DNA of 64,000 nt from Octopus sinensis (GCF_006345805.1 NC_043019.1:12709360-12773359); one strand, 5' to 3'. Numbered from the stretch's first letter, positions 746 through 21,469 are shown. Numbers and translations are program-made. Notes: generated by a model from the letters alone, not told the origin.

Positions 746-953
746 CTTAGACCATTCACCGACTTGCCATTCTCCAGCACAAGGAATCCGGTTGCATTCC
801 CGGGTACCATTGGGTTCTTTACTTGCATCGCAGTAAGAATCAGAAACCACTTCATCTTTCTTTCGGGTGTCTGACACACAAAAGTATACGGGTTGCTCCA
901 CACCATCTGTGCCGCACGTTTTAGAACAACTGCTCCATCGTTCAACCACCCAC
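746..953 (-). CDS. ADAMTS-like gene exon: TSP1 repeat plus start of the next TSP1 (WVVERWSSCSKTCG...RECNRIPCAGEWQVGEWSK)
   Basis: Acceptor ttttatgcag|G at 955-954 and donor AAG|gtaag at 745. Phase 2 to 0. WxxWxxCSxxCG and Cys spacing fit TSP1. Confidence 0.92.
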
Positions 954-1055
954 CTGCATAAAAATAAGCGCTTTCTTCATAACCTAATCATAACATTTCG
1001 AAACTAATATATATATATAATAATAATAATAATAATCATAATAATAATAATAATA

Positions 1056-1093
<38 letters not shown>

Positions 1094-1381
1094 GGGAATA
1101 TTATTCCAAACTTACAGGGAAAAATTCAATTTAGAAATACTAAATCAAATTTCACAAAATATAATATATATATATTATGTGTGTGTGTGTGTGTGTGCGT
1201 GTGTGTGTAAATTAGAAAAAACACCTTTTATCAATTTAATAATGAAAAAATTAAATTATACCATTTAGAAAAATTACATCTTATAGAAAGATTAAACATA
1301 TGATAAAACATATATCAATTATTAAGTAATATGCAAAATAATAAATAAAACGTATATATTTGGTATTTATGTATGTATGTA

Positions 1382-1412
<31 letters not shown>

Positions 1413-1952
1413 CATACATGCATACATACACACACGCACACACATACATACATACATACATACATACATACATACATACATACATACATACATAGTTCAA
1501 ATTTACAGAAAACAAAAGACAAGGACAGGCGAAGGAACAGCAAGTAGGTGTATTGGTTTAACGCTCGGGAAGAATGGAATAGTCTTTGACGTTTCGAGCC
1601 TACGCTCTTTTGCAGAAAGGATTAAGAGGAATAAAAAAATAAAACGGGGAGAGAATGAAAAGATAAAAACGCAGAGAAAAAAAAAATGTGTCGGGATAAG
1701 GGTTCAACATGATGAAATGGCCGGAAGAGAGAGGGCGATGTTGAAAAGTTCCTAGCTTTAAGGGAATCGGGAAAAGCCTGATTGGAGGCCCAAACTTCAA
1801 TGTTGTTAAATTAAAATGTTTTAATTTAACAACGTTGAAACATTTCAGTTTGTCGACATTGAAACTTATAATGATGTTTTTCTAATTTTACACTTTTACC
1901 ATTGATAAAGAAAAAAATATTGTTGAAACTAGTTTGGTATTATATGTAAATG

Positions 1953-2330
1953 TGGAGGCGCAATGGCCCAGTGGTTAGGGCAGCGGACTCGCGGTCATAG
2001 GATCGCGGTTTCGATTCCCAGAACGGGCGTTGTGAGTGTTTATTGAGCAAAAACACCTAAAGCTCCACGAGGCTCCGGCAGGGATGGTGGTGATCCCTGC
2101 TGTACTCTGTCACCACAACTTTCTCTCACACCTTTCTTCTGTTTCTGTTAACCTGTTTCAAAGGCCGGCCTTCACTCTCTGTGTCACGCTGAATATTCCC
2201 CGAGAACTACGTTAAGGGTTACGTGTATGTGGGTAGTGCTCAGCCACTTACACGTTAATTTCACGAGCAGGCTGTTCCGTTGACGGATCAACCGGAACCT
2301 CGTCGTCGTAACCGACGGAGTGCTTCCATT
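1953..2330 (+). mobile_element. tRNA-headed SINE, family B (head GGAGGCGCAATGGCCCAGTGGTTAGGGCAGCGGACTC)
   Basis: A-box TGGCCCAGTGG and B-box GGTTTCGATTCCC. Near-identical copies at ~8725-9102(-), 19537-19917, 42427-42812. Same head with other tails at 27343-27635, 41311-41603(-), 38352-38645, 40871-41160. Confidence 0.9.
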
Positions 2331-2437
2331 TCATATATGTAAATAAATGTATTTTAAACATTTACGAGCTTTTGAAATGTAAGTGCATTTTCAGCAACAC
2401 ATTTTCTATATATATAGATATATCTATATATATATAG

Positions 2438-2470
<33 letters not shown>

Positions 2471-2484
2471 ACATATATTTTTTA

Positions 2485-2860
2485 CTTGTTTCGTCATTTG
2501 ACTGCGGCCATGCTGGAGCAACCGCCTTTAATCGAGCAACTCGACCCCGGGACTTATTCTTTTGTAAGCCCAGTATTTACTCTATCGGACTCTTTTGCCG
2601 AACCGCTAGGTAACGGGGACATAAACACACCAGCATTGGTTGTCAAGCAATGCTAGGGGGGCAAACACAGACACACAATATATATATATATATACGACGG
2701 GCTTCTTTCAGTTTCCGTCTACCAAATCCACTCACAAGGCTTTGGTCGGCCCGAGGCTATAGTAGAAGACACTTGCCCAAGGTGCCACGCAGTGGGACTG
2801 AACCCGAAACCACGTGGGTGGTATACAAGCTACTTACCACACAGCAGCCACTCCTGCGCC
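2485..2860 (-). mobile_element. tRNA-headed SINE, family A (head GGCGCAGGAGTGGCTGTGTGGTAAGTAGC, internal (TA)n/(TG)n)
   Basis: B-box GGTTCAGTCCC, CORE-like CCTTGGGCAAGTG block and tail AATGACTGAAACAAGTAAAAGAG. Other copies at ~5776, 6349, 9540(-), 10533, 20480(-), 23400, 25015, 25587, 26161, 31344, 35345, 35835(-), 40390(-), 41640, 43185(-). Confidence 0.9.
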
Positions 2861-3076
2861 TATATATATATATATATATATACAGAGAGAAAGAGGGAGA
2901 GGGACAAAGAGAGACAGGGGGGGAGAGAGAAAGACAGAGAAGGAGGGAGAATGAGAGAGAAAGAGGGAGATAGTAGGGGACAAGCAGCGAAGATCACTGA
3001 GTGAAGACATAATATTCTTTTATCAGATTCAGTCATTTGGCTGCGATCATGCTGGAGCAACACCATGTATATTTAC

Positions 3077-3209
3077 CTTGATTTCATACATTCCTCCCGT
3101 TTACACTCCACTTTGTCAATCCGGGGATCTTCAAGATGGAGACAGAAGTTCTTCTCAACAAGTTTATCGGTGAGTGTATTGAAACAGTTGTACATCGTAT
3201 TCTGAATTC
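3077..3209 (-). CDS. ADAMTS-like gene exon: second half of a TSP1 repeat (GIQNTMYNCFNTLTDKLVEKNFCLHLEDPRIDKVECKREECMKSR)
   Basis: Acceptor tttgccaacag|GA and donor AG|gtaaat. 133 nt, phase 1 to 2, exactly bridging exons 4292-4430 and 746-953. Not in the ORF track. Confidence 0.9.
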
Positions 3210-3369
3210 CTGTTGGCAAAGACATTAATTATTAACCAATTAATTATAGATACTCATTAATATGTCTGTTTGTCTGTCTGTATGTTTGTTCTTTTCGCTT
3301 TTTAACAATTTGAATTCTTCTACTGAGGGGCTGCTTTCTAACAAAGATACAAAGCTCCCTCATTGGAAT

Positions 3370-3730
3370 GTATTGAGTTGTCCGGAAAGTTCGTGCCGAT
3401 TTTTAAAGGAAAGAAAAAGGTCAACAAATATTTGCCATTACATTTTTAATCAACCAAATATGAACCATTTTGTTGCACAATGCGTCTTCATCTTTCCTTT
3501 AACTTGAAAATACTCTCTTCCCAGAATTGAGGTGGTTTCATCGCAAATAATTCATGAAGGTATCTTTTTATGTCATCCAAGGAATTGAAATTTTTACCAT
3601 TAAGACTATTCTGCAGAGACCTGAATAAGTGGAAATCTGAAGGGGCAATCTCTGGTGAATATGGAGGATGGGGTAACACATCCCAGCCGACCTGCAGCAA
3701 TTTTTGTTGAGAGGGATTCTTTGGAGTTTG
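3370..3730 (-). mobile_element. Mariner transposon fragment (catalytic C-terminus and one TIR)
   Basis: PHPPYSPEIAPSDFHLFRSLQN (YSPDLAP motif) in ORF 3488-3700. TIR TATTGAGTTGTCCGGAAAGTTCGTGCCGATTT at ~3370. Confidence 0.88.
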
Positions 3731-4021
3731 AATAATTCACCTCTGGAAACACGGGTGTTCCGTTCAACATACTTAAACAACCCTTATTCAGAGACCTTTT
3801 GAGCGGGATGGGTTACTCGACCAGAGGAAAATTCTAACTGGTCCCCACCTGCAAGGTCATGTGCTGTTTATCTTGATATGAGATCACCATGTCGCGCACA
3901 TATGGTTGTGATGCATGTGCTTGGTGTACCTTTATCAGACGGGTAGTCATAATGGGTATACTGGGCTTCGTATATTTTACCCCAGTGTCACTTTGATGGC
4001 ATGCACTGCTCTCTCTCACTC

Positions 4022-4062
<41 letters not shown>

Positions 4063-4291
4063 TAATTTCTGCTGCGGGCACCGGGCACTGATTTTTCTGA
4101 GGGGAGGGGCATGTCGATTAAATCAATCCCAGTATTCAGCAGGTACTTATTTTGTAGACTCCGAAGGGCATGAGAGGCAAAGTTGACCTTGACACAACAT
4201 AAACCCGGGAGAAATGCCGATAGCTAAACGTCTTGTCTGCAAGCTCGTCGTCTTAACAACAACAACAACAACAACAACAACACTGGCTTAC

Positions 4292-4430
4292 CTGCGCCGC
4301 AAGAAACGCTACATTCACTCCATTTGTCAAAACGCCACTTAAAACTGTTTTTCTCAAAGGTGTAATCGTCTCGACTGGCCGTGTAGCTATACGATATCTC
4401 GGAGTCTGTGTTGTTTTCTGTCATATACAA
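4292..4430 (-). CDS. ADAMTS-like gene exon: end of spacer (ISYSY) and start of TSP1 (KWRFDKWSECSVSCGAG)
   Basis: Acceptor cttctag|TTG and donor G|gtaag. Phase 0 to 1. Confidence 0.92.
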
Positions 4431-4887
4431 CTAGAAGTAGGAAAAAGACAAAAACAAAAAAAAAAGAAAAAATGAAAAAAACCCCAAAAACATTGGTAAT
4501 GTCATTACAAATGCAGTGTTGGTAAAGAAGCCGTTTATTATAATCACGGATAATGTCATTAAACGGTTATTGTTATCAAAATTCGTGGGTGGCAAAATCT
4601 ATACTTAAAATGAATTACAATTGAAAAAATTATGCGCTTATTAGAATCTAAGGTTCAGATTGCTATATTTCAGATTGCTATATCTTCTGCTTAGCGTTAT
4701 CAGTTATTGTTATCAAAATTCGTGGGTCACAAATTCTGCATTAAAAATGGATTTGAATTGGAAAAATTATGCACTTATTAGAACCTAAGACCCAGATTGC
4801 TAATTCTTCTGCTTAATGTTATCAAGCAGATAATTGTTATCGAATAGATTTTGTTCAAGTGTGATCGCCATTAAGTGACTGTCACTA

Positions 4888-5335
4888 AGGCGGCGAGCTG
4901 GCAGAATCGTTAGCAAGCTGGGCGAAATGCTTAGCAGTATTTCGTCTGCCGCTACGTTCTGAGTTCAAATTCCGCCAAGGTCGACTTTGCCTTTCATCCT
5001 TTCAGGGTCGATTAAATAAATACCTATTTCTTTATTACCTACAAGGGGCTAAACACAGAGGGGACAAACAAGGACAGACATAGGTATTAAGTCGATTACA
5101 TCGACCCCAGTGCGTAACTGCTACTTAATTTATCGACCCCGAAAGGATGACAGGCAAAGTCAACCTCGGCGGAATTTGAACTCACAGTGTAACGCAGACG
5201 AAATACCGCTAAGCATTTCGCCCGGCGTGCTAACGTTTCTGCCAGCTCGCCGCCTAAATAAATACCAGTTACGCACTGGGGTCGATGTAATCGACTTAAT
5301 CTGTTTGTCTGTCCTTATTTGTCCTCTCTGTGTTA
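4888..5335. mobile_element. Inverted/rearranged cluster of tRNA-headed SINE family C (head GGCGGCGAGCTGGCAGAATCGTTAGC)
   Basis: B-box GAGTTCAAATTCC and central block GTCGACTTTGCCTTTCATCCTTTCGGGGTCGAT. A plus copy abuts a minus copy. Other copies at ~10280, 13455(-), 18915, 22793, 23565(-), 24700(-), 32185(-), 37130(-), 45760. Confidence 0.85.
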
Positions 5336-5518
5336 ATAAGGATCCCTTCCAGGGGCCCTTAATATCGATTTCTTTTTTCAACAATTTTAGTATGCCATGA
5401 GGTTTCCAGACATGAGGTTTCATCAAAATCGATAAAACGATGTTGGAGGAGTTAGCTAACAACCCCACACACACTCCCACGGACAGAATTTCCCACACGT
5501 GTAGTAGATATTTGTTTG

Positions 5519-5560
<42 letters not shown>

Positions 5561-6824
5561 TATGTGTGTGTTTGAACCCCACGACCGCGTGACAACCCGT
5601 GTTAATGTGTTTACGTCCTATTGACCTTGAACTCTTCTGTGTATGTGCACTGGGTTATAGCCTCACTTCCGCTGTTTACAGCAGTGCTTGGAAGGAAGGT
5701 GTGTAGCGTGTGATCGTCGCTACATTTTTGAAATTTTTGAAATTTATGGATTCCTTTGATTTCTATTTTACTCAGGGCGTAGGAGTGGCTGTGCGGTAAG
5801 TAGCTTACTTACGAACCACATGGTTCCGGGTTCAGTCCCACTGCGTGGCACCTTGGGCAAGTGTCATCTACTATAGCCTCGGGCTGACCAAAGCCTTGTG
5901 AATGGATTTGGTAGACGGAAACTGAAAGAAACCCGTCGTATATACGTATATATATATGTATGTGTGTGTATGTTTGTGTGTCTGTCTTTGTCCCCCTCAA
6001 CATCGCTTGACAACCGATGCATGGTGTGTTTACGTCCCCGTCAGAATAAATAGCGGGTTTTAAAAAAAAGGCCTGGCGTCGATTCATTCAGCTCAAAAAT
6101 CTTTCAGCATGACTGCAATCGAATGACTGAAACAAGTAAAGATAAAGGTTAAAGAAAATAAAAGATATGCAATGTTAGGGTCAATCTAATGAGTTAATCC
6201 TCCTAATATGTACACTGGCGTATTTTATGCCATCAGATGCATATTTATGAAACGTCGGCAGTGATTTTTTTTTTGTGGTGTATTTAATTTTGTTGATTGG
6301 TAGCAAGGGTTGGGGTGGCATTGAAAAATGCATTAGTAAGAGAAAAGAGGGAGTGGCTGTGTGGTAAGTAGCTTGCTAACCAACCACATGGTTCCGGGTT
6401 CAGTCCCACTGCGTGACATCTTGGGCAAGTGTCTTCTGCTATAGCCTCAGGCCGACCAAAGCCTTGTGAGTGGATTTGGTAGACGGAAACTGAAAGAAGC
6501 CTGTCGTTTATATGTATATATACATATGTATGTGTGTGTATATGTTTGTCTGTGTCCCTCTAGCATTGCTTGACAACCGATGCTGGTGTGCTTACGTCCC
6601 CGTCACTTAGCGGTTCGGCAAAAGAGACCGATAGAGTAAGTACTGGGCTTACAAAGAATAAGTCCCGGGGTCGAGTTGCTCGACTAAAGGCGGTGCTCCA
6701 GCATGGCCGCAGTCAAAATGACTGAAACAAGTAAAAGAGTAAAAGAGAGAGAGACGATGGTTCGAAAAATATTTTTGAGAAACACTGTTTTTTTTTTTTA
6801 CCAAAGACCAAAATTACGTCATAC

Positions 6825-6988
6825 CTTTGCTAATAAAAAGCCGTTAATCGGTCCGATTGATTGTAACGTTTCTTCTGTTTCAGTGTTGGTGTAAATAAAG
6901 CGAGCCCCTCTTGCTATGAACGAATGCGAAGGGGCCTGAATACCGTCACCATTCAAAGGGAATTCGTTGGCTTTCTCGTCTTCAATTG
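6825..6988 (-). CDS. ADAMTS-like gene exon: spacer domain (AIEDEKANEFPLNGD...GARFIY...ETLQSIGPINGFLLAK)
   Basis: Acceptor tctgttacag|CA and donor AAG|gtatga. 164 nt, phase 1 to 0. LNG / F.Y / E.L...GP spacer motifs. Not in the ORF track. Confidence 0.9.
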
Positions 6989-7194
6989 CTGTAACAGAAA
7001 TAAAAGTAGGATTAGATTCAATGGAGATCTTGAAAAAAAAATACCAAACAGATGAATGATCAAAGCTGTTCCAGCGGTGACATTCCCATTTTTTCCAGGA
7101 ATTGATTTTCTAGGACTCAATTGTCTAATGTAACTTTACTTTAAAAAGATACGATAGCTTATGATTTGAAGAGAAGGCTCAGTTAAAGACATAC

Positions 7195-7284
7195 CCATGA
7201 AATTATTTCGACTGGGAGACTCTGATATGAAGATATTTCTGGCTCCTTTTGGTAAAACAATGATTCTATGATATTTCATCAGTT
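7195..7284 (-). CDS. ADAMTS-like gene exon: start of spacer (ELMKYHRIIVLPKGARNIFISESPSRNNFMA)
   Basis: Acceptor ttctgttgcag|AA and donor G|gtatgt. 90 nt, phase 1 to 1. Y..I..(I/L)P.GA..I.I.E motif. Confidence 0.92.
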
Positions 7285-7821
7285 CTGCAACAGAATAGAG
7301 GAAAATGGCTCAAAATATAGAAAGATAAATGAGTATATATATATAAATAAATACAATTGTAGCGTGGAAGGTGTGTATAAGCCATTAAAACACACACACA
7401 CACAAACACACAAAATCCGTTAGATTCACTTCAACATTTAAATTTAATTTGTGTCAAAATATTTTCGTCGCTTTGAAACCGCGACCTGTTCACAGACAAA
7501 ATCCATAGTTGAGTTGCTTACGTCAGTAGAGATACTTTTATGTTGAGAGAGAGAGAGAGAGAGAGAGAGAGGAAGAGAGAGAGGAAGAGAGAGAGAGAGA
7601 GGGTGAGAGAGAGGGAGTGAGAGACTGACAGATAGAGAGCCAAAGAGAAGGAGCGAGAGAAATGGGAGGCGGTAGGAAAATGAGTGAGAGGGAGGAACCG
7701 ATAGAGAGAAAGGAAGGTAGAGAGGGAAAGATGGAGAGAGAGAGAGAGAGAGTCGGGAAAGAGAGAGAGACAGGAAGAGAGGGAGGGAGGGAGAGAGAGA
7801 GAGAGTGGAGGATAGACATAC

Positions 7822-7942
7822 CTTTCTCTGACGATCGATTCGTTGTTCCTGAGATTGATTTGCAAGTAGTGTTGTCCCCATTACATTGTCCACAGGCGTC
7901 TGCTTTCATTGGAGATTCTAAGACACCGTCGCAACCGACTTC
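7822..7942 (-). CDS. ADAMTS-like gene exon: end of Cys-rich domain (EVGCDGVLESPMKADACGQCNGDNTTC)
   Basis: Acceptor ttcgttgcag|GAA and donor G|gtatgt. VGCD..L.S....D.CG.C.GD.TTC motif. Phase 0 to 1. Confidence 0.95.
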
Positions 7943-8129
7943 CTGCAACGAAAACGAACAAATCCAGATATCATTTAGAGATTCTGTTGGGACAAAAGCT
8001 TAATACTTGTTCATACAGCCACAACTCAATATGGCGGTTGACAAGAACGATGTTTTTCCAACCATGTTCGTTGAATAAACCATTAGGTAAACTGAAAGTC
8101 CGTGTCAAAAAGAAATTTAAAATCAATTT

Positions 8130-8632
8130 TAAGTTGTTGAAGATGACGATGTATGGTTTGAACTAAGCTTTATTGCCAATTCTTCAACTGATAATGCAAG
8201 ATTTTCTTCAAGTAATGCCTCAAGGAACTTATCATCAAACTCAACTGAACGTCCTGTTTGATCTTCATTTTCAAGGCTGAAATCTCCACTTCTGAATTTT
8301 GCAAACCATCTTCTGCAAGTTCTTTCATTCAAGCATTCTTTCCCATAAACCGAGTGTATGTTTCGAGTCGCTTCGGCTGCAGAGTTTCCTTTTTTGTACT
8401 CATAAAGCATTATGTGCCTTGAATGCTCTTTGGATAATTGCATGTTAGAAAGGGTTTTAATGAAAGAAATTTTAATTCTGTTATTCTGTAAAATAATATT
8501 TAATTAGTTTAAATGTACACAAATGTATAAAAATAATTTTTTAATTTCATTAGACATTCTAAAATACTTTTTAAATTTCATTCAATTTTAAAAAAGGTAA
8601 AATCGGACAGAACTTATGGGATCACCTGATAT
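8130..8632 (-). mobile_element. Mariner transposon 5' fragment (paired HTH DNA-binding domain and left end)
   Basis: ORF 8129-8443: RHIMLYEYKKGNSAAEATRNI...RTCRRWFAKFRSGDFSLE. TIR-like end at ~8600-8632. Confidence 0.88.
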
Positions 8633-9331
8633 AATCAAAGTATCTGAAAAGAAATGAAAGGAAGCCAACGAACAATAAAGCGCAAAATTAAATCTCTGCC
8701 TACAATTCTGTAAATACATGGAATGGAAGCACTCCGTTGGTTACGACGACGAGGGTTCCGGTTGTACCGAATCAACGGAACAGCCTGCTCGTGAAATTAA
8801 CGTGTAAGTGGCTGAGCACTTCATAGACACGTGTACCCTAAACGTAGTTCTCGGGGATTCAGCGTGACACAGAGAGTGACAAGGCCGGCCCTTTGAATAT
8901 AGGTAACAACAGAACAGGAAGTAAGAGTGAGAGAAAGTTGTGGTGAAAGAGTACAGCAGGGATCACCACCATCCCTGCCGGGCCTCGTGAGCTTTTAGGT
9001 GTTTTCGCTTAATAAACACTCACAACACCCGGTCTGGGAACGAAACCGCGATCCTTTGACCGCGAGTCCGCTGCCCTAACCACTGGGCCATTGCGCCTCC
9101 ACAATTCTGTAAATACAAACATCCACAAATAACGTTCACACACATACGCGCTATCATACGCATGCGCACACACATACGCGCTATCATACGCATGCGCACA
9201 CACATACGCGCTATCATACGCATGCGCACACACATACGCGCTATCATACGCATGCGCACACACATACGCACACCCACACCCACACCCATACACATTCTGA
9301 AAAGTGGAACATGTAAACCTGTGAACCCCAC

Positions 9332-9465
9332 CTGGCAAATTCCTCGGACGCATATATTATTTGAACCATCGTATTGGCAAAGTGTTCCGTCTTTGACATC
9401 CGCTTCCGTTTGAAGAATTTCCGCCGTCTCCTTTGAGATGCAGTTAAGTTTACAAAAGTTCGTAC
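9332..9465 (-). CDS. ADAMTS-like gene exon: Cys-rich domain (GTNFCKLNCISK...VKDGTLCQYDGSNNICVRGICQ)
   Basis: Acceptor tttttccag|GT and donor CAG|gtgggg. C.L.C / V.DGT.C / CV.G.C motifs. Phase 1 to 0. Confidence 0.93.
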
Positions 9466-10007
9466 CTGGAAAAACATAGCAATAACTTTACAAAAAAAAA
9501 ACAACAAAAAAAATTTGAATTGGGTCGATTCTTTTATTCTTCTGCTTGTTTCGGTCATTTGACAGTGGCCATGCTGGAGCACTGCCTTGGAGGATTTTAG
9601 TCGAAGAAATCAACCCAAAGACTTTTAAGCTTAGTACTTATTCTATCGGTGTCTTTTGCCGAACTGCTAAGTTACGGGTGTTAAACACACCAACACCGGT
9701 TGTCAAGTGGTGGTCGGGGGACAAACACAGACTCAGTCACACACACACACACACACATGTACACGTGCGCGCACGCACATACACACACATATACGACGGA
9801 TTTCTTTCAGTTTCCGTCTACCAAATGCGTTCACAAGGCTTTGGTCGACCTGAGGCTATAGTAGAAGATACTTGCCCAAGGTGCCACGCAGTAGGATTGA
9901 ACCCGGAACCATGTGGTTGGGAAGCAAGTTTCTTAGGGATTACGCAGCAACGGTTAGACTAAGTCGAACAGACTGGAGCTATATATAATTAAGTGCTTTG
10001 ATTAAAC

Positions 10008-10272
10008 ATTCATTATTTGGTTTCAAAATTTTCGTTGCACTTATGGTGATCTGGTCACTGATGCGGTTCTACTGCGTGGTCATTTAACTTTGGTATTAAT
10101 TCCAAGTTTACTGACCAACTATAAGCATCCGACTCAGAACGGTTGACCTATATTGTTGGGAAAATGTATAACCCTGGAACCTTTATGCGCCGACCAGCAA
10201 CCTAGATGCAACAGAATTGCATCAGTGACCAGGGCGCAATTGGGGCGACGAAAATTTTGACACCAAATGATA
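10008..10272. mobile_element. Palindromic MITE-like element
   Basis: CTGGTCACTGATGC (10051-10064) is inverted to GCATCAGTGACCAG (10219-10232). TCAAAATTTTCGT near 10022 is inverted to ACGAAAATTTTGA near 10248. Confidence 0.65.
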
Positions 10273-10698
10273 TTTTCAAATTTTGGCCACGGAAGGGCTT
10301 TTAGGGAAGAGGTGAATCGATCACATCGACCCCATTAATTGAGTGGTACTTATGTTAGTAACCACCAAAATGGAAAATCAACCTCGGCAGAATTCGAACT
10401 CAGGAATGCCGCTATAAATTTCGTCTGGCGTGCTAACGAAGTTAGCAGTCATCGTGTGTGTGTGAGTGTGTATGAGTTTTTGAATGGCTAATATCAATCT
10501 TCCATGCTGTAATTGTTTTAGCTTTAGCATATGGGCGTAGGAGTGGCTGTGTGGTAAGTAGCTTGCTTACCAACCACATAGTCCCGGGTTCATTCCCACT
10601 GCGTGGCACCTTGGGCAAGTGTTCTACACTATAGCCTCGGACCGAAAAGCTTTGTGAGTGGATTTGGTAGACGAAAACTGAAAGAAGCCCGTCGTATA

Positions 10699-10748
<50 letters not shown>

Positions 10749-11130
10749 TATATATATATGCGTGTGTGTGTGTGTGTGTGGGGTGTGTTTTTGTATGTAT
10801 GTGTTTGTCTCCCCAACATCACTTGACAACCGATGCTTGGGTGTATTTACGTCCCCGTCACTTAGCGGTTCGGCAAAAGAGACCGATAGAATAAGTACTA
10901 GGCTTACAAAAGATAAGTCCTGGGGTCGAGTGCTCGACTAAAGGCGGTGCCAAGCATGGTCGCAGTCAAATGACTGAAACAAGTAAAAGAGTAAAAGAGT
11001 AAAAGAGATACGGTCTCAGATCAAACACTTTGCCTCGCGTGTACGTCTCCGAATTTACGCCACGTCTATCAACTACACTTCGTCTTTTCACTAAGTATTC
11101 TGGGTGTAATAAACGCACAAAATATCCTAC

Positions 11131-11236
11131 CGTTTCCGAGTTGTGTTGGTCTCCACGTATGCTGGTTGTTTCCAATCACATAGCCATCGAAAAGTGCACA
11201 TTGTTCAGCTCTCATGTCTCTGCTGTTTACACACAC
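11131..11236 (-). CDS. ADAMTS-like gene exon: start of Cys-rich domain (VCVNSRDMRAEQCALFDGYVIGNNQHTWRPTQLGN)
   Basis: Acceptor tttgttgtag|GTG and donor G|gtagga. D.R.EQC...W.P motif. Phase 0 to 1. Confidence 0.9.
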
Positions 11237-11308
11237 CTACAACAAAAAATTATAACGTATGCATATATGTATATATGTATGTATGTGTGTATCCACATTG
11301 ATAGGTAT

Positions 11309-11500
11309 ATACGAGGGGAGTGCTGAAAAGTTCCTGGGTAAAATACAGAAGTATCAGTTAATTATGATTTCATTCAACATATTTCCCGTCTCAGATTCAC
11401 ACACTTATTGCAGAGGTCCTTCGGGTTTTCTAAACCCTGTAAAAGAACTCAGGAGGTTGGGCCGCTGACCAGACTTTTCGCGACACCGAAATTTCAGCAC
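11309..11500 (+). mobile_element. Terminal fragment of a second mariner-like family
   Basis: TA followed by CGAGGGGAGTGCTGAAAAGTTCCTGG, a Tc1/mariner-style terminus. Confidence 0.5.
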
Positions 11501-11693
11501 CCCATCGACATACATTATACGCACTCACACACACACACACACACACCACACACACCACACACACCAACACACACACCACACACACACAACACACACAAAA
11601 TACACACACACACACACACACAACAAACACGTATATATACATATATACACATAAATCATATAACATTAGGTAGAGGTGCTTATCTCCCATATA

Positions 11694-11742
<49 letters not shown>

Positions 11743-11790
11743 AATATATCTATATATCTATATTAGTATATATATATATATGTATGTGTG

Positions 11791-11822
<32 letters not shown>

Positions 11823-11897
11823 CAGACAAAATGAGATGACAAAGCCAAGGCTGTGAGGAGTTTTCAGGACATTTATAAGGAATATATAATGTATATA

Positions 11898-11929
<32 letters not shown>

Positions 11930-11965
11930 TATAGATATATATATATATATAATATATATTATATA

Positions 11966-12250
11966 TACTACAAAATTAGAGAATGGAGGAAATATACTTA
12001 AATCAGTAAAACATCAACTATCCGATGATACTCACTCCATACTTTAATACACCATTACATATGAGTAAAGGCAATACATAAAATGAAATGAGATATACAG
12101 TAATAGTAACAAGATAAAGAGATATAAGTAAAAAATTTTCAAATAATATGCAAATAAATCAAACTGACAGCTGTTTCGGCAGTGAGGACAGTCATACCTC
12201 ATTTAACCTATAAGCCATAAGGCAGGTATAAATGGGCATTAACAAGGATG
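11966..12250 (+). repeat. ~280-bp dispersed repeat (Penelope pLTR-like); further copies at 14866-15145(+) and 15438-15717(-), diverged relative at ~34500-34800
   Basis: Direct sequence identity between copies. All are (TA)n-flanked and carry the TGACAGCTGTT(T)CGGC motif. Confidence 0.7.
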
Positions 12251-12400
12251 CCCCACGGCCTTCAGAGAATTAAATAAATTTGTTATAATAGTGAAAAATA
12301 TTATACAATCATATACATATAAATATAAAAATATAAAAATGTAAATATAAAAAACTTTATACATCATAAAGCTACACTTCAACCCCTATCTCATTTTATA

Positions 12401-12453
<53 letters not shown>

Positions 12454-12470
12454 TATATAATATATATATA

Positions 12471-12517
<47 letters not shown>

Positions 12518-12858
12518 TATATAAAGTAGACAAAGTATAAATATTTATGTTGCATATATATTTTGCTTAGTACACATGCGCGCGTGAGTATGTTTGTGTG
12601 TTGTGTGTGTGTATTTACGGGTATACATTCATGATCTTTCACTCTCTTTATTTCTTTTGTTTTCTCGTCTGCGATGAACTTTCTCCTGTTATAATTCACT
12701 ACATTATCTCACTTTAAAATATTCAAATTTATTCAAATACTCACAATAGTTTTCCGTTTACATTCACACAAACGACAGGTGTTCCATGTTCAATTTTACA
12801 GGTTTTTTAAAAAACTTTTTTTTTTTATATGTAAACTATGAGAAATAATACCACCTAC

Positions 12859-12922
12859 GTCCGTTTTGCAAATCTTGAATTCTTCAAGGCGACCTTCACA
12901 TTCCTTTCCCTTAAACGCTGGG
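12859..12922 (-). CDS. ADAMTS-like gene exon: second half of the first TSP1 (PAFKGKECEGRLEEFKICKTD); first visible exon of this segment
   Basis: Acceptor tatttctgtag|C and donor GAC|gtaggt. P...G..C.G......C pattern. Phase 2 to 0. Confidence 0.9.
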
Positions 12923-13013
12923 CTACAGAAATAAGAATATATGTGCATGTGGTTATACATGTTCATACGAATGCATGCATGCATGCAGGTATGTATGTAT
13001 GTATGTATGTATG

Positions 13014-13047
<34 letters not shown>

Positions 13048-13350
13048 TGTATGTATGTATGATTTTTTTGCGTAATGAGATAAAAAAACCAAGGCTGTAT
13101 AGATATTAGAGCATTTATAGATAGAAGGTTCTTACAGATGTTTCTAGGATATAATTAATAATATCCCTTCATCGGAGACGGTGTGAGAGGAAAGTTAAGT
13201 CATAGTTAGTTTCGATGTGATACAAAATAGAGAGTGATGTAGAGGAAAGAAAATAGATGCAAGATATATATGGATATTGAGTTGTAAATCCATTTTTTAG
13301 GCATAATGGTATATATAATTATCCAATATCCTATGAGTAAAGTCTAAAAG

Positions 13351-13450
13351 NNNNNNNNNNNNNNNNNNNNNNNNNNNNNNNNNNNNNNNNNNNNNNNNNN
13401 NNNNNNNNNNNNNNNNNNNNNNNNNNNNNNNNNNNNNNNNNNNNNNNNNN
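13351..13450. other. Assembly gap (exactly 100 N, probably an unknown-size scaffolding gap)
   Basis: Run of 100 N. Confidence 1.
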
Positions 13451-13689
13451 ACCCACAAGGGGCTAAACACAGAGGGGACAAAAAGGACAGACATGGGTAT
13501 TAAGTCGATTACATCGACTCCAGTGCGTAACTAGTACTTAATTTATCGACCCCGAAAGGATGAAAGGCAAAGTCGACCTCGGCGGAATTTGAGCTCACAA
13601 CGTAACGCAGACGAGATACCGCTAAGCATTTCGCCCGGCGTGCTAACGTTTCTGCCAGCTCCCCGTCTAACTTGAGTGAAGGAGGTCTA

Positions 13690-14072
13690 TATAACGTCCT
13701 TTGTTTGTATAACTGTATACGGTAACGTCCTTTATTATTATTGTATATATAACATAATGCAAACGTGTAGCTTTTTTGTGCATTTTGTTTGCAGAAAATA
13801 AAAATTAACAATAATAATGTTTAATAAATGTTGCTTATTGCAAGTTATGGATGATCCCTTTATGACTTCATTGCTTTCAGGCTTAGCTTAAGGTATTTTC
13901 GCGCCTAACATCACAAAATGCGTTTGAATAAACATTGCCGGACAGTAAATAGAGACTCGGACATTGCTTAGAAAATATTTTTCATTTTTAACCTCGTATA
14001 TAGTACGCACTAGGGATTTTGGCCTTTAAATTTTGGGGAAAAAATGCGGATTATACTCGAGGATTTACGGTA
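13690..14072. mobile_element. Tc2/pogo-like DNA transposon remnant
   Basis: Ends in AAAATGCGGATTATACTCGAGGATTTACGGTA, the reverse complement of a TACCGTAAAT...-type terminus. Confidence 0.45.
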
Positions 14073-14132
14073 TGTCATAATATTAGTTTATCAATTCCGG
14101 ATATGATAGCATGGGAGCGGTCTGGATCCTTT

Positions 14133-14172
<40 letters not shown>

Positions 14173-14509
14173 GCACTTATATTCATTAAATAAAGATAAA
14201 AATCACATTAATGGTAATTATCAGGTAGTCAGCATGGAAATAAGTAATTTATATATTAAATTAATAATCATATATATATGTGTGTGTGTGTTGTGTATTA
14301 ATTTAATATACATACACTTATACATATATATGCGTGTGCGTATGTGTGTGTATGTGTGTATGTATGTTGTTGTGTATATATAATACACACGCGCACACAC
14401 ACATATATATATATCATGTATGTATGTTAGTATATATATATATATATATATCTATATATTATATTTATATATATATGTACATGCATATATATTATTATAT
14501 ATATAATAA

Positions 14510-14545
<36 letters not shown>

Positions 14546-14653
14546 GATATATATATATATATATACATGCATATATATACGTGTACGCACACATGCATAT
14601 TATATATATATATATATCTATACATGCATGCATACATACATTCATACAGGTAT

Positions 14654-14688
<35 letters not shown>

Positions 14689-15715
14689 TTTATTTATAGG
14701 TTATAAAATGAGATAGGGGTTGAAAATTCAACCACCATGGGATAATATATATCCAATATACTGCCAGATAGGTACCCACAAGACTAATACATAGATGTTA
14801 AAAATTGTCAAACAATCAGTTCATCTATTGTATTATATGGGTAAGGTGATAATATTACCGTAAATTAATACTAAAATTTAGAGAATGGAGAAACATACTT
14901 AAATCAATAAAACACAACTATCCGATGATACCCAATCAATACTTTAATACACCATTACATATGAGTAAAGGCATTATACAAAATAAGATATACAGTAATA
15001 GTAAAAAGATAAGAGATATAAGTAAAAAATTTCAAATATAATATGTAATTAAATCAAAACTGACAGCTGTTCGGCAGTGAGGGCAGTCATACCTCATTTA
15101 ACCTATAAGCCATAAAGGCAGGTATAAATGAGGCATTAACAAGGATGCCCACGGCCTCTCTTCAGAGAATTAAATTAAATTTGTTATAATTGTGAAAAAT
15201 ATTATATAACCATATACATATAAATATAAATTAAAAATTAAAATATAAAAACTTATACATCATAATGCTACACTTATATAATATAATACTCATTGGTACA
15301 ATAAAGGAAGGTAACAGAACAAAATAAACAAATATATATCAGTGTATATATTAATATTAATAAGTACCGATATTATACATATTTGGCTAATAGTTTTTTT
15401 AAAAAAAACTAACACATAGGGAGATGAAAAATAATATCCTTGTTAATGCCTCATTTATACCTGCCTTTATGGCTTATAGGTTAAATGAGGTATGACTGCC
15501 CTCACTGCCGAAACAGCTGTCAGTTTTGATTTAATTACATATTATATTTGAAATTTTTTACTTATATCTCTTTATCTTTTTACTATTACTGTATATCTTA
15601 TTTTGTATAATGCCTTTACTCATATGTAATGGTGTATTAAAGTATTGATTGGGTATCATCGGATAGTTGATGTTTTATTGATTTAAGTATGTTTCTCCAT
15701 TCTCTAATTTTGTAG

Positions 15716-15774
<59 letters not shown>

Positions 15775-16177
15775 CATACATACATACATACATACATACA
15801 TACATACATACATACATACATACATACATACAATGCACACTGAAGCCTATTAGATAACGTTGATAATCAAAGGCAAAGCTTTCACGTTTAATGCGTAACG
15901 CTAAACGGCCTGAAGTAATGACGACCAATGAAAGTGCATTAGATTACTGCTTTGAGGAGACATATTACTTGTATTTACCGACCACACCTCGAAAGTTTTC
16001 GTGTCACCTGATAGTGAAATAGTAAAAAGAAACAATGAGCAGCAAGAGCATAAAGATTGGATTACGTAAAAACCAGACGATATGTTTGTTACCTTCTCCG
16101 AAAGCTTGTAAGCTACGCGTTTCGGGTTACTAAAAATAGCAACCAAACCTTTCCCACTTTACATCCAAGCAACTAAA

Positions 16178-16180
<3 letters not shown>

Positions 16181-16242
<62 letters not shown>

Positions 16243-16287
16243 GCTACCTATCTATCTACCTATCTATCTATCTATCTATCTATCTAC

Positions 16288-16332
<45 letters not shown>

Positions 16333-16447
16333 CATCCATCGATCTATCTACCTATCTATCCACCTATCTATCTATCTATCAATCTATCTACTTATCTATC
16401 TACCTATCTACCTATCTACCTATCTATCTATCTATCTATCTATCTAC

Positions 16448-16487
<40 letters not shown>

Positions 16488-16506
16488 TCTATATCTATCT
16501 ATCTAC

Positions 16507-16537
<31 letters not shown>

Positions 16538-16670
16538 CTATCTATCTATCTACTATCTATCTATCTATTATCTACTACCTATCTATCTACCTATCTATCT
16601 ACCTATCTATCTACCTATCTACCTATCTACCTACTTGTCTATTTATCTACCTATCTATCTATCTATATGG
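16181..16670. repeat. (TATC/TACC)n microsatellite, ~490 bp
   Basis: Seen directly. Confidence 0.98.
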
Positions 16671-16745
16671 CAAATAACGATCTACATATATAGAGAGAGA
16701 AAAAAACCAGACCATGTGTGATGGATTATATGCTGTACATCTCTG

Positions 16746-16792
<47 letters not shown>

Positions 16793-16807
16793 TATATATA
16801 TATATTA

Positions 16808-17048
16808 CAAAATAAGCAACAAGAATAACTTCGGTAATTTGGTACGATCGTTTCACACTACATCATTTTATTAAATGTTGTAAGTATTACAACAGTTTTA
16901 AAATGCTGAGCACTCATCAGCCATTAATAGAGGTTTTCCATTAATACATAATTTTCATATCAATTGTAATACTTACAACATTTAATAAAATGATGTAGCG
17001 CGAAACGATCGTACCAAATTACCGAATTTATTCTTGTTGCTTATTTTG
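16808..17048. repeat. Hairpin element: ~85-bp near-perfect inverted arms (16808-16892 / 16964-17048)
   Basis: CAAAATAAGCAACAAGAATAA...TATTACAA versus its reverse complement. Confidence 0.85.
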
Positions 17049-17124
17049 ATTATAACCACCCCATGGATTTATATGGATAACACCATACAAAGTTCTGGTG
17101 CATCTAACTTAAAACCATATTCAT

Positions 17125-17183
<59 letters not shown>

Positions 17184-17189
17184 ATATAT

Positions 17190-17759
17190 ATATTGCGTTG
17201 TCCGGAAAGTTCGTGCCGATTTATAGTAGCTTACCTTTCGACTTATTTTAGAACATGGTTGAGCCCATAAAATAGGATTTTACTACACCTCCATTTAGAA
17301 CACAGTTTAAGCTATCTTTTCATGGAAGAAGGTTATGTTCCTATAACCTATGTTAATTCTGTAAACCTTTAAAATGGAAGATGAGAAAGTTCATTTTCGG
17401 TACTTGATACTTTGGGAACCAGGCAAAAATTGCTGCAGCTTGGCTGGGATGTGTTACCCCACCCTCCATATTCACCAGATATTGCTCCTTCGGATTTCCA
17501 ATTATTCAGGTCTCTGCAGAATAGTCTTAATGGTAAAAATTTCAATTCGTTGGATGACGTAAAAAGATACCTTGATGAAGTCTTTGCCATGAAACCCCCT
17601 CAATTCTGGGAAGAGGGTATTTTCAAGTTAAAGGAAAGATGGAGGCGCGTTGTGCAACAAAATGGTTCATATTTGGTTGATTAAAAATGTAATGGCGAGT
17701 ATTTATCGACCTTTTTCTTTCCTTTAAAAATTGGCACAAACTTTCCGGACAACCCAATA
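17190..17759 (+). mobile_element. Internally deleted non-autonomous mariner with both TIRs
   Basis: TIRs ...GTTGTCCGGAAAGTTCGTGCCGATTT and AAATTGGCACAAACTTTCCGGACAAC.... MEDEKVHFRYLIL is fused directly to the PHPPYSPDIAPSDF segment. Solo ends of the same family at ~18008-18079 and ~22081-22130. Confidence 0.92.
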
Positions 17760-18664
17760 GATACACGTACATATACGCACACACTCATTGTACTAAATGA
17801 CAAATTGTAATACACACGGCGAACAGCATGAATCACACCATGATTTGCATGTATAATATTACATAGGAAGCTCGATCTGCTGGAAATAGCAACTGAATCT
17901 CATATTACCGTCCTTACAAATTGACACATTGGGTAATGTGTCTAAATACAATACAGGTTGGTTCATAGGTAGGGATCACTGGAGTTAAACAGCAATATTT
18001 TATGGACTCAACCATGTTCTAAAATAGGTCGAAAGGTAAGCTACTATAAATCGGCACGAACTTTCCAGACAACCCAATATATCTAATTCATCCTTTGGAG
18101 TCGATAAAATAAGCACCAGTTGAGCACTGGGGTCGATTTAATCGATTTTAAACTAATGTTATTAGAAGTTAAATCGTCATATAGACGGCGAACAGCATGA
18201 ACCACAACAATGACTTGCATAATCATTTTTAATACTTTTCAGATTTGAATGCATTATAAATAAATATGCAAGTCATTGGTTTGATTGTTGCTCTTCACTG
18301 TTGATACGACAATTTATGGTTGGTTGGCAGACATCAGCAAGAGTCATAAAACAGTTTTATTTCACTGAAGTTAGAAACAGGTGTTTCGACTCCTGGGTAG
18401 ATTCATTTATCCGGGAATGCCTCTGGCTCATGAAACACAGTGAAGTCGAAACAGCGGCTATTCCAGAGTCCCTTGCATTAATGAATTAAGTGTTATGAAC
18501 TCACGTTCATCGTAAAGGAGTTGTTCTCCTGCGACGAAACACAACAGTGATCAACGTATTCACGTTCGGATCCGCCGGAACGTATTTAGAACAAATATGT
18601 AGCCGCCATTGTTAATTGAGATGGGGAAGAAAAAAGTCTTTAAAACTCAATAGCGATGTCATAC

Positions 18665-18773
18665 CAAGGTTTTCTGTCATAATGGTTGCTTCCGTAGCAT
18701 TTTCAATCTTTGTAGCCACGTTTTCTCCATAATTCTCCAAAGTCTTCAATAATGATGTCGCTGAAGTCTCTTT
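18665..18773 (-). CDS. aGPCR-like gene exon 13 (last visible): GAIN domain (KETSATSLLKTLENYGENVATKI...IMTENLG)
   Basis: Acceptor ttttcctcag|AAA and donor G|gtatga. Phase 0 to 1. A..LL..LE helix and T.NL strand typical of the GAIN A/B transition. Confidence 0.85.
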
Positions 18774-19261: not shown

Positions 19262-19333
19262 CTTTTTGTTCATAGTCTCCCAGTTTTGTTTCCGTTTAGG
19301 GGCCAAAATATTGTCTACAGCTTCGAAAAATTG
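19262..19333 (-). CDS. aGPCR-like gene exon 12: GAIN subdomain A (QFFEAVDNILAPKRKQNWETMNKK)
   Basis: Acceptor ttcttttccag|CAA and donor AAG|gtagct. V.NIL......W motif. Phase 0 to 0. Confidence 0.88.
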
Positions 19334-20294: not shown

Positions 20295-20327
<33 letters not shown>

Positions 20328-20328
20328 G

Positions 20329-20374
<46 letters not shown>

Positions 20375-20401
20375 CTATATATATATATTATATATATATA
20401 T

Positions 20402-20468
<67 letters not shown>

Positions 20469-20639
20469 GTATGTGGTGTGTGGGTGCATGGATCAGTGGT
20501 CAGAGCGTCAAGCTTACAATCCTGAGGTTGTGAGTTCGAATCTCGGACAGGGCTGTCAAGCGATGTTGAGGGGGACAAACAAAGACACAAACACACACAC
20601 ACAACACCACCACACACCACACACACACAATACATATAG

Positions 20640-20673
<34 letters not shown>

Positions 20674-21109: not shown

Positions 21110-21172
<63 letters not shown>

Positions 21173-21245
21173 TATCATCTTCGCTAACTCGTTATCAAAA
21201 GAAATCAAAAGACAACACAAGAGGGATTCTTTAGAGTTGACTTAC

Positions 21246-21431: not shown

Positions 21432-21468
21432 CTTTAAAACATTTACATATTAATAGATAATAAATATA

Positions 21469-21469
<1 letters not shown>

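What the first reader, a model, noticed from the sequence alone, without database searches (positions are those of the whole stretch)
746..18773. GAIN-encoding gene stops and an ADAMTS ancillary module starts on the same strand across a 100-N gap: possible chimeric aGPCR/ADAMTS-like gene
Seen: after the last GAIN exon (18665, phase 1) there is no recognisable GAIN-B/GPS/7TM exon in the 5.2 kb before the gap. 430 bp past the gap, a TSP1-CysRich-spacer-TSP1-TSP1 chain starts mid-TSP1 (phase 2), with no protease, prodomain or first-TSP1 exon. Both halves are missing exactly the parts that would face the gap. Inference, three models: (a) two tandem genes with a large hidden gap; (b) mis-ordered contigs, where the ADAMTS-like module is really the N-terminus upstream of the stalk, giving an ADAMTSL-mucin-SEA-Ig-HRM-GAIN-7TM receptor (the stalk exon also lacks its 5' exons); (c) a read-through fusion. 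I know of no described protein with architecture (b) or (c), but (a) is the most parsimonious.
Basis: partly seen in the sequence, partly recalled or inferred. Interest (0 to 1): 0.75.

Follow-up and report, generated by a model that had tools for sequence, protein, structure and literature searches.

The report
Two gene fragments meeting at assembly gap
The apparent receptor/ADAMTS hybrid is most likely an assembly artefact: two ordinary octopus genes, an adhesion GPCR and an ADAMTS-type matrix protein, are each cut off where two contigs were joined by a 100-N gap.

Summary
The window is 100% identical to Octopus sinensis GCA_006345805.1, chromosome CM016881.1. On the minus strand an adhesion-GPCR gene (mucin stalk, SEA-like, Ig, Ig, HRM, GAIN subdomain A) stops at exon 18773-18665. 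No GAIN-B, GPS or 7TM exon exists anywhere in the 64 kb. An ADAMTS ancillary module starts mid-TSP1 at 12922, 428 bp past the gap.

The chimeric reading is not supported:
- In O. bimaculoides the orthologous exon is followed 3.4 kb later by a GAIN-B exon (protein A0A0L8H9Y6). That exon is absent from the window.
- Collinearity between the two species ends at window ~15796. From there to the gap the O. sinensis contig holds only repeats.
- The canonical splice phases (donor 1, acceptor 2) are out of frame.
- None of the 150 closest receptor relatives contains an ADAMTS-like stretch. All eight full-length relatives checked carry GAIN, GPS and 7tm_2.
- NCBI annotates two genes here. One ends by intron read-through and the other starts at an intronic ATG.

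Verdict: two separate, truncated genes at a scaffold join of unknown true size. Whether they are true neighbours or a mis-join could not be decided. Interest is low.

The parts
13351..13450 (.). 100-N scaffold gap between two contigs. It lies in non-coding sequence and its true size is unknown.
   Evidence: Only N run in the window. Same gap in L001 at 33506-33605. Flanks do not overlap, and the right flank starts in a SINE-like repeat.
18665..18773 (-). Last assembled exon of the adhesion-GPCR gene (GAIN subdomain A, '...ETSATSLLKTLENYGENVATKIENATEATIMTENL'). Donor is in phase 1. The NCBI model reads on into the intron to a stop at 18612.
   Evidence: Exact rebuild of P0002. DNA and splice sites. 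Pfam GAIN positions 76-113 of 210.
19262..36955 (-). Ten upstream exons of the same receptor gene, encoding SEA-like, Ig, Ig, HRM and the start of GAIN-A: 36955-36866, 35261-35212, 32484-32351, 30863-30621, 28807-28616, 26117-25989, 24440-24339, 22311-22217, 21431-21246, 19333-19262.
   Evidence: P0002 rebuilt exactly with AG/GT sites. HRM 1.2e-6. Relatives carry SEA-Ig-Ig-HRM-GAIN-GPS-7tm_2.
38972..53371 (-). Likely mucin-like Ser/Thr-rich stalk of the receptor. It includes tandem arrays at 39177-40207 and 47334-51951 (32 copies of 144 bp, 97% matches) and long ORFs of 393-708 aa.
   Evidence: TRF. Long minus-strand ORFs. Membership in the gene is inferred from strand, position and the O. bimaculoides upstream model.
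13451..15796 (-). Repeat-only tail of the right-hand contig, where collinearity with O. bimaculoides is lost. The position where the GAIN-B exon is expected falls in this stretch or in the gap.
   Evidence: L002 21862-22280 matches window 16219-15796, and nothing orthologous follows. Repeat copies.
12859..12922 (-). First assembled exon of the ADAMTS-type gene: second half of the central TSP1 ('PAFKGKECEGRLEEFKICKTD'). Acceptor is in phase 2. The NCBI model starts at an intronic ATG at 12966.
   Evidence: Coordinate mapping of the L001 gene start 33990.
7822..11236 (-). Cysteine-rich domain exons: 11236-11131, 9465-9332, 7942-7822.
   Evidence: Splice sites. ADAMTS_CR_3 4.7e-7. ADAMTS13 DTCS 1.3e-14 in PDB.
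4292..7284 (-). Spacer exons 7284-7195 and 6988-6825. Exon 4430-4292 holds the end of the spacer and the first half of a TSP1 repeat.
   Evidence: ADAMTS_spacer1 1.1e-13. ADAMTS5 cysteine-rich/spacer structure 9rwm, 3.5e-16.
3077..3209 (-). Second half of that TSP1 repeat ('GIQNTMYNCFNTLTDKLVEKNFCLHLEDPRIDKVECKREECMKS'). The first-stage reader did not list this exon.
   Evidence: Cysteine-pattern scan. Splice sites and phases fit both neighbouring exons. With it, TSP1_ADAMTS covers profile positions 1-55.
746..953 (-). A full TSP1 repeat plus the start of the next one ('...EWQVGEWSK'). The gene continues beyond the window start.
   Evidence: TSP1_ADAMTS 9.5e-10. Splice sites.

Best explanation
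Two unrelated genes lie on the minus strand, and each is truncated by the end of its contig. The 100-N gap is a scaffold join of unknown true length, not a short unread stretch.

Gene 1 is an adhesion GPCR of the invertebrate type: variable N-terminus, mucin stalk, SEA, Ig, Ig, HRM, GAIN, GPS, 7TM. Its right-hand contig ends in repeats inside the intron after the last GAIN-A exon. Its GAIN-B, GPS, 7TM and tail exons are therefore unassembled, unplaced or placed elsewhere.

Gene 2 is an ADAMTS-superfamily gene, either a protease or an ADAMTSL/papilin-type protein. Its left-hand contig starts in the intron that splits the central TSP1 repeat. Its signal peptide, any pro- and catalytic domains, the disintegrin-like domain and the first half of TSP1 are therefore missing.

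The juxtaposition is an artefact of assembly. It either reflects true tandem neighbours with tens of kb of missing sequence or a mis-ordered contig.

Shown: the domain content, exon phases, absence of the missing exons from the window, and the GAIN-B continuation in the O. bimaculoides ortholog.
Inferred: that O. sinensis still has those exons somewhere else.
For: 1. The window is identical to O. sinensis GCA_006345805.1 CM016881.1, gap included. That assembly has 20,491 contigs in 13,516 scaffolds, with only 86.09% of bases in chromosome-scale scaffolds (PMC10700109). Missing or unplaced pieces are therefore common.
2. O. bimaculoides protein A0A0L8H9Y6 (P0045) starts with the orthologous last GAIN-A exon and continues 'TENL|AVVVQKVEKEKDVVFPGENKK...'. 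That next exon sits 3.4 kb downstream (L002 22864-23001, 100% identity), with an acceptor that fits the phase-1 donor.
3. P0002 plus that continuation gives a full-length GAIN match (profile 4-209 of 210, E 4.8e-26). The O. sinensis HRM/GAIN exons alone matched only GAIN positions 76-111 (E 1.2e-3).
4. That exon, and all GPS and 7TM exons, are absent from the 64 kb window.
5. Orthologous collinearity ends at window 15796. The remaining 2.3 kb to the gap is repeats, and the contig end lies in a SINE-like copy.
6. Of the eight full-length relatives checked (P0005, P0006, P0007, P0010, P0012, P0013, P0019, P0022, P0024 less one), all carry GAIN, GPS and 7tm_2. P0009 and P0017 are truncated. N-termini vary (SRCR, cadherin, fn3). 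None of the 150 representatives has any ADAMTS-like stretch.
7. The best database relative of the ADAMTS module (P0001) has Reprolysin, TSP1 and cysteine-rich domains in front of the aligned part.
8. Splicing 18665 to 12922 shifts the frame and stops after 24 codons.
9. NCBI annotates two genes. One ends by intron read-through and the other starts at an intronic ATG.
10. dN/dS between O. sinensis and O. bimaculoides over the shared receptor exons is about 0.48, with no stops. The receptor fragment is therefore not a decayed relic.
Against: - No transcript and no independent assembly of O. sinensis or O. vulgaris across the gap could be reached, so the content of the gap is not known.
- Both fragments lie on the same strand, in head-to-tail order.
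- A cryptic acceptor 5 nt inside the ADAMTS exon (cccag|CG, exon start 12917) would be in frame with the phase-1 donor (hand translation of the, 46 sequence).
- A ~0.6 kb repeat occurs in this window only on the two sides of the gap. That would fit either real adjacency or a repeat-mediated deletion.
- The missing O. sinensis exons were not located anywhere.
Confidence: 0.85

Rival explanations
1. Model (b): the contigs are mis-ordered, and the ADAMTS-like module really lies upstream of the mucin stalk. That would give one receptor with the layout ADAMTSL-mucin-SEA-Ig-Ig-HRM-GAIN-7TM.
For: N-termini of this receptor family are highly variable (SRCR, cadherin, fn3, EGF-like). No 5' end or signal-peptide exon of the receptor was identified in the window. 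The assembly is fragmentary. From general knowledge, TSP1 repeats do occur in ADGRB/BAI receptors.
Against: None of the 150 closest representatives has any stretch similar to the ADAMTS module. The O. bimaculoides model just upstream of the SEA exon (407 aa) has no Pfam hit on record. The ADAMTS fragment itself lacks its 5' half, so it would still need a further upstream contig. No positive evidence links its 3' end to the stalk.
Confidence: 0.03
2. Model (c): a real fusion or read-through. A deletion, or transcription across a short true gap, joins GAIN-A to the half TSP1 and the ADAMTS ancillary chain, giving a secreted chimeric protein.
For: Same strand and order. A cryptic in-frame acceptor at 12917. 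A shared ~0.6 kb repeat on both sides of the gap could have mediated a deletion.
Against: The canonical acceptor is out of frame and leads to a premature stop. The product would join an incomplete GAIN domain, lacking subdomain B and GPS, to a TSP1 repeat lacking its Trp layer and first cysteines. Neither half-domain is expected to fold (inference). NCBI's evidence-based pipeline did not join the two. The ortholog has GAIN-B.
Confidence: 0.04
3. A real truncation in O. sinensis: the genome has lost the 3' half of the receptor and/or the 5' half of the ADAMTS gene, leaving one or two pseudogene fragments or a secreted decoy.
For: The expected GAIN-B exon is not at its syntenic distance from the last GAIN-A exon. 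The receptor exons evolve fast (aa identity 56-92% per exon).
Against: All exons on both sides are open with intact AG/GT sites. dN/dS is about 0.48. Loss of synteny coincides with a repeat block that runs to a contig end, which is the usual signature of an assembly break.
Confidence: 0.06

Closest known systems
Invertebrate adhesion GPCRs with SEA-Ig-Ig-HRM-GAIN-GPS-7tm_2 layout (relatives P0005, P0007, P0010, P0012, P0013, P0019). Among vertebrate receptors, ADGRF (GPR116-type: SEA plus Ig) and the HRM-GAIN receptors CELSR, ADGRB and latrophilin.
   Same: Same order of SEA-like, two Ig, HRM and GAIN-A. The best PDB matches of the HRM/GAIN-A part are CELSR1, ADGRB2, ADGRF1 and latrophilin-1. 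Octopus-specific expansions of adhesion GPCRs are described in PMC6408891.
   Different: GAIN-B, GPS and 7TM are not in the assembled locus. There is a very large mucin-like tandem array upstream. Sequence identity to any non-octopus relative is 33% or less.
ADAMTS proteases (ADAMTS5 and ADAMTS13 ancillary domains) and the protease-less ADAMTSL/papilin proteins.
   Same: Central TSP1 (second half), cysteine-rich domain, spacer and C-terminal TSP1 repeats in the canonical order. PDB matches are ADAMTS5 cysteine-rich/spacer at 3.5e-16 and ADAMTS13 DTCS at 1.3e-14.
   Different: No signal, pro-, metalloprotease or disintegrin-like exons are in the window. Protease versus ADAMTSL cannot be decided.
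ADGRB1-3 (BAI1-3), the known adhesion GPCRs with TSP1 repeats.
   Same: From general knowledge, they combine TSP1 repeats with HRM-GAIN-7TM in one protein. They are the nearest precedent for the chimeric reading.
   Different: BAI receptors have plain TSP1 repeats only, with no ADAMTS cysteine-rich or spacer domain. Here there is no evidence that the TSP1 chain belongs to the receptor.

Membership tests
Adhesion GPCR (class B2) | Complete GAIN domain (subdomains A and B) | tested here: not met
   Only GAIN-A is in the window (profile positions up to about 113 of 210). The O. bimaculoides ortholog supplies positions 75-209. The shortfall is therefore attributed to the assembly, not to the gene.
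Adhesion GPCR (class B2) | GPS autoproteolysis motif | tested here: not met
   No GPS hit in the minus frames of 13451-18664. No tblastn hit from 150 relatives anywhere in the window.
Adhesion GPCR (class B2) | 7tm_2 seven-helix domain | tested here: not met
   Absent from the window. Present in 8 of 11 relatives scanned; P0007 has only the first 57 of 250 positions, and P0009 and P0017 are truncated.
Adhesion GPCR (class B2) | HRM domain immediately before GAIN, as in the nearest relatives | tested here: met
   HRM 1.2e-6 and 3.9e-6, above the curated cut-off.
ADAMTS protease | Reprolysin-type zinc metalloprotease domain with a prodomain | tested here: not met
   tblastn with the protease part of P0001 finds nothing in the window. 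The NCBI 487-aa model lists no protease family. The 5' part of the gene is missing, so this does not exclude membership.
ADAMTS protease | Disintegrin-like domain and complete central TSP1 | tested here: not met
   Only the second half of the central TSP1 is present. No W-x-x-W / CSxTCG first-half exon lies in 12923-13350 or 13451-18664.
ADAMTS superfamily (ADAMTS, ADAMTSL, papilin) | Cysteine-rich domain followed by the spacer | tested here: met
   ADAMTS_CR_3 4.7e-7 and ADAMTS_spacer1 1.1e-13, both above curated cut-offs. PDB matches to ADAMTS5 and ADAMTS13.
ADAMTS superfamily (ADAMTS, ADAMTSL, papilin) | C-terminal TSP1 repeats of the ADAMTS type | tested here: met
   Two TSP1_ADAMTS stretches, 4.9e-16, plus the start of a third repeat at 746.
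ADAMTSL / papilin | Signal peptide followed directly by TSP1, with no protease | not testable with these tools
   The 5' exons lie in or beyond the gap. No other octopus assembly or transcript could be reached.
   Canonical splice phases are incompatible. 0 of 150 receptor relatives have an ADAMTS-like stretch. NCBI annotates two genes. The ortholog continues with GAIN-B. Transcripts were not available.

The most novel reading that the evidence does not exclude
In the O. sinensis/O. vulgaris lineage the ADAMTS ancillary chain really is part of the adhesion GPCR. It would be either an N-terminal module upstream of the mucin stalk (contigs mis-ordered) or a fusion to GAIN-A through a deletion and the cryptic in-frame acceptor at 12917. 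Either would give a domain architecture that has not been described.
Probability: 0.05. Interest if true: 0.6.

Novelty: not a real feature. Interest (0 to 1): 0.1.

Why it matters
If the chimera were real, it would be a new adhesion-GPCR architecture linking matrix-binding ADAMTS domains to a tethered-agonist receptor. The evidence says it is an assembly and annotation artefact.

The practical value is as a curation note. LOC115223690 and its ADAMTS-like neighbour in the O. sinensis RefSeq annotation are both partial models. One has an artificial stop from intron read-through and the other an artificial intronic start. The O. bimaculoides ortholog is split into at least three models. Neither should enter gene-family or domain-architecture counts as a complete protein.

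Tried and rejected
- Word-indexed homolog search with the ADAMTS module returned only one distant ENA protein (P0001). It did not return the NCBI 487-aa model of this locus or any cephalopod ortholog. Synteny of the ADAMTS gene in other octopuses could therefore not be tested.
- The same search with P0045 returned only P0045 itself. It has no contig on record, so I could not walk further downstream in O. bimaculoides.
- L002 ends in an N run about 1 kb after the GAIN-B exon and is riddled with gaps.
- A literature search for LOC115223690 found nothing.
- Passing raw translated frames to the Pfam tool failed because of stop codons. I repeated it with X at each stop.
- My first scripted test of the cryptic acceptor was mis-sliced by one base. 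The in-frame result comes from reading the sequence by hand: G + CG TTT AAG gives A F K.
- I considered whether the two gap flanks overlap, which would make the gap spurious. They do not.
- I considered whether the receptor exons are decaying. dN/dS is about 0.48 with no stops.
- I did not try to predict a signal-peptide exon upstream of the mucin array. Without transcripts the prediction would not be reliable.


Full report
WHERE THE WINDOW COMES FROM

The receptor peptide found NCBI protein 'uncharacterized protein LOC115223690 [Octopus sinensis]' (P0002, 484 aa). The contig that encodes it is GCA_006345805.1, CM016881.1, fetched as L001. L001 is 100% identical to the window on both sides of the same 100-N gap: L001 1-33505 equals window 46955-13451, and L001 33606-38344 equals window 13350-8612. 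Both features of the finding lie on the minus strand.

THE GAP, TESTED FIRST

- There is one N run, 13351-13450.
- No exon or open frame abuts it. The nearest exons are 5,214 bp away on the right and 428 bp away on the left.
- The ends do not overlap each other. The left 300 bp is unique in the window. The right contig begins inside a SINE-like repeat with more than ten copies in the window.
- From general knowledge, a run of exactly 100 N is the conventional placeholder for a gap of unknown size.
- This assembly has 20,491 contigs in 13,516 scaffolds, with only 86.09% of bases in chromosome-scale scaffolds (Table 1 of PMC10700109).
- Continuity across the gap therefore cannot be assumed.

RECEPTOR SIDE

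- P0002 is reproduced exactly by 11 minus-strand exons with AG/GT borders, from 36955 to 18612.
- The final 'exon' of the NCBI model is the true exon 18773-18665 plus read-through of the intron to a stop at 18612.
- The true donor is CTT G|gtatga, in phase 1.
- Pfam finds HRM (1.2e-6) and only the first half of GAIN (profile positions 76-113 of 210).
- Upstream lie Ser/Thr-rich tandem arrays and long ORFs, including 32 copies of 144 bp at 47334-51951, that look like a mucin stalk.
- Downstream, the three minus-strand frames of 13451-18664 give no Pfam hit at E up to 1.
- tblastn with all 150 relatives finds no GAIN-B, GPS or 7TM exon anywhere in the 64 kb.

ADAMTS SIDE

There are nine exons with consistent phases:
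- 12922-12859
- 11236-11131
- 9465-9332
- 7942-7822
- 7284-7195
- 6988-6825
- 4430-4292
- 3209-3077
- 953-746

These were defined. Its phases fit both neighbouring exons. With it, the 386-aa peptide gives two TSP1_ADAMTS stretches (4.9e-16), ADAMTS_spacer1 (1.1e-13) and ADAMTS_CR_3 (4.7e-7).

The closest solved structures are the ADAMTS5 cysteine-rich/spacer domains (3.5e-16) and ADAMTS13 DTCS (1.3e-14).

The first exon starts in phase 2 in the middle of the central TSP1. The NCBI model (487 aa, listing only cysteine-rich, spacer and TSP1 families) starts at an intronic ATG at 12966. No protease, disintegrin or first-half-TSP1 exon is in the window. The chain runs off the window at 746.

1. 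Ortholog evidence.
   - An exhaustive HMMER search with P0002 found a 153-aa O. bimaculoides protein (P0045, UniRef A0A0L8H9Y6). It begins with the orthologous last GAIN-A exon and continues 'TENL|AVVVQKVEKEKDVVFPGENKKLETWVKEAKTTATLPKALLKKTLG|NGNSVG...'.
   - In the O. bimaculoides locus L002 (CM046623.1) that next exon lies at 22864-23001, 3.4 kb after the GAIN-A exon.
   - Its acceptor, ttag|CG, fits a phase-1 donor.
   - P0045 alone matches GAIN positions 75-209 (9e-16).
   - P0002 plus this continuation gives a full GAIN match (positions 4-209, 4.8e-26).
   - Neither the peptide nor the DNA of that exon is in the window.

2. Where synteny ends.
   - Alignment between the two species is collinear from the stalk down to window 15796 (L002 22280).
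   - From there to the gap the O. sinensis contig holds only repeats.
   - The simplest reading is that the contig terminates in a repeat block before reaching the GAIN-B exon.

3. Family architecture.
   - Eleven relatives were scanned (P0005, P0006, P0007, P0009, P0010, P0012, P0013, P0017, P0019, P0022, P0024).
   - Those that are not truncated all have GAIN, GPS and 7tm_2. Most carry SEA, Ig and HRM before GAIN, and their N-termini vary (SRCR, cadherin, fn3).
   - A phmmer search of the ADAMTS module against all 150 representatives hit none of them.

4. Splicing.
   - Joining donor 18665 to acceptor 12922 shifts the frame and stops after 24 codons.
   - A cryptic acceptor 5 nt downstream (cccag|CG) would be in frame, so phase alone does not exclude a fusion.
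   - The product would join an incomplete GAIN domain to a half TSP1 repeat, which is not expected to fold (inference).

5. Annotation. NCBI calls two genes, each with an artificial end facing the gap.

6. Selection. The receptor exons shared with O. bimaculoides give dN/dS of about 0.48 with no stops. This argues against an old truncation.

CONCLUSION

These are two separate genes, each cut by a contig end. The 100-N run is a scaffold join that hides, or misplaces, at least the GAIN-B, GPS and 7TM exons of the receptor and the 5' half of the ADAMTS-type gene.

I could not decide three points:
- whether the two genes are real tandem neighbours or were brought together by a mis-join;
- whether the ADAMTS-type gene is a protease or an ADAMTSL/papilin-type protein;
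- where the missing exons are.

No O. vulgaris assembly, unplaced contig or transcript was reachable with these tools.

The chimeric readings keep a small residual probability, about 0.05 to 0.07 together. Three things sustain it: the same strand and order, the cryptic in-frame acceptor, and a ~0.6 kb repeat found in this window only on the two sides of the gap.

Noticed in passing
Its phases fit the 4292 donor and the 953 acceptor, so the ADAMTS chain is uninterrupted.
   Followed up: yes
window 47334-51951 and 39177-40207 (-): Very regular coding-looking tandem arrays (32 copies of 144 bp at 97% matches; 66/99-bp units) with Ser/Thr/Asn-rich ORFs of 393-708 aa. They are probably a giant mucin-like stalk of the receptor. 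The ORF is broken at a few points, which may be introns or long-read errors.
   Followed up: partly
window 11889-12504; 14597-14724; 14868-15275; 15436-15789: A ~0.6 kb repeat present in this window only on the two sides of the gap (85-90% identity; two right-hand copies form an inverted pair). It is absent from the O. bimaculoides locus. It could mark a local repeat cluster that broke the assembly.
   Followed up: partly
window 12917 (-): A cryptic acceptor, cccag|CG, 5 nt inside the first ADAMTS exon would be in frame with the phase-1 donor at 18665. By coincidence the true O. bimaculoides GAIN-B exon also starts with CG.
   Followed up: partly
window 18612-18664 and 12923-12966 (-): The NCBI gene models are padded with intron sequence. 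LOC115223690 ends with 'GMTSLLSFKDFFLPHLN*' read from the intron. The ADAMTS-like model starts with 'MNMYNHMHIYSYFCS', also from intron sequence.
   Followed up: yes
L002 (O. bimaculoides CM046623.1 10079425-10104145): The orthologous receptor gene is split into at least three models: 407 aa upstream, LOC106871914 at 273 aa, and A0A0L8H9Y6 at 153 aa. The locus contains eight N runs. P0003 ends by read-through into a SINE.
   Followed up: partly
window 8132-8503 (-), 3491-3736 (-), 17412-17684 (+): Mariner/Mos1-type transposase fragments inside introns of both genes. The first carries HTH_48 at 2.1e-24. The other two resemble the C-terminal end of the transposase by eye, but the copy at 17412-17684 gave no Pfam hit and the copy at 3491-3736 was not scanned.
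   Followed up: partly
window ~57700-63100 (-): Long ORFs that look like a non-LTR retrotransposon: endonuclease and reverse-transcriptase-like ORFs of 333 and 342 aa, plus a 673-aa ORF at 61090-63108. They lie upstream of the mucin arrays.
   Followed up: no
receptor exons 28807-18665 compared with L002: The receptor evolves fast for a 34-My split: per-exon aa identity is 56-92% and pairwise dN/dS is about 0.48. This is in line with the reported octopus-specific adhesion-GPCR expansions (PMC6408891).
   Followed up: partly
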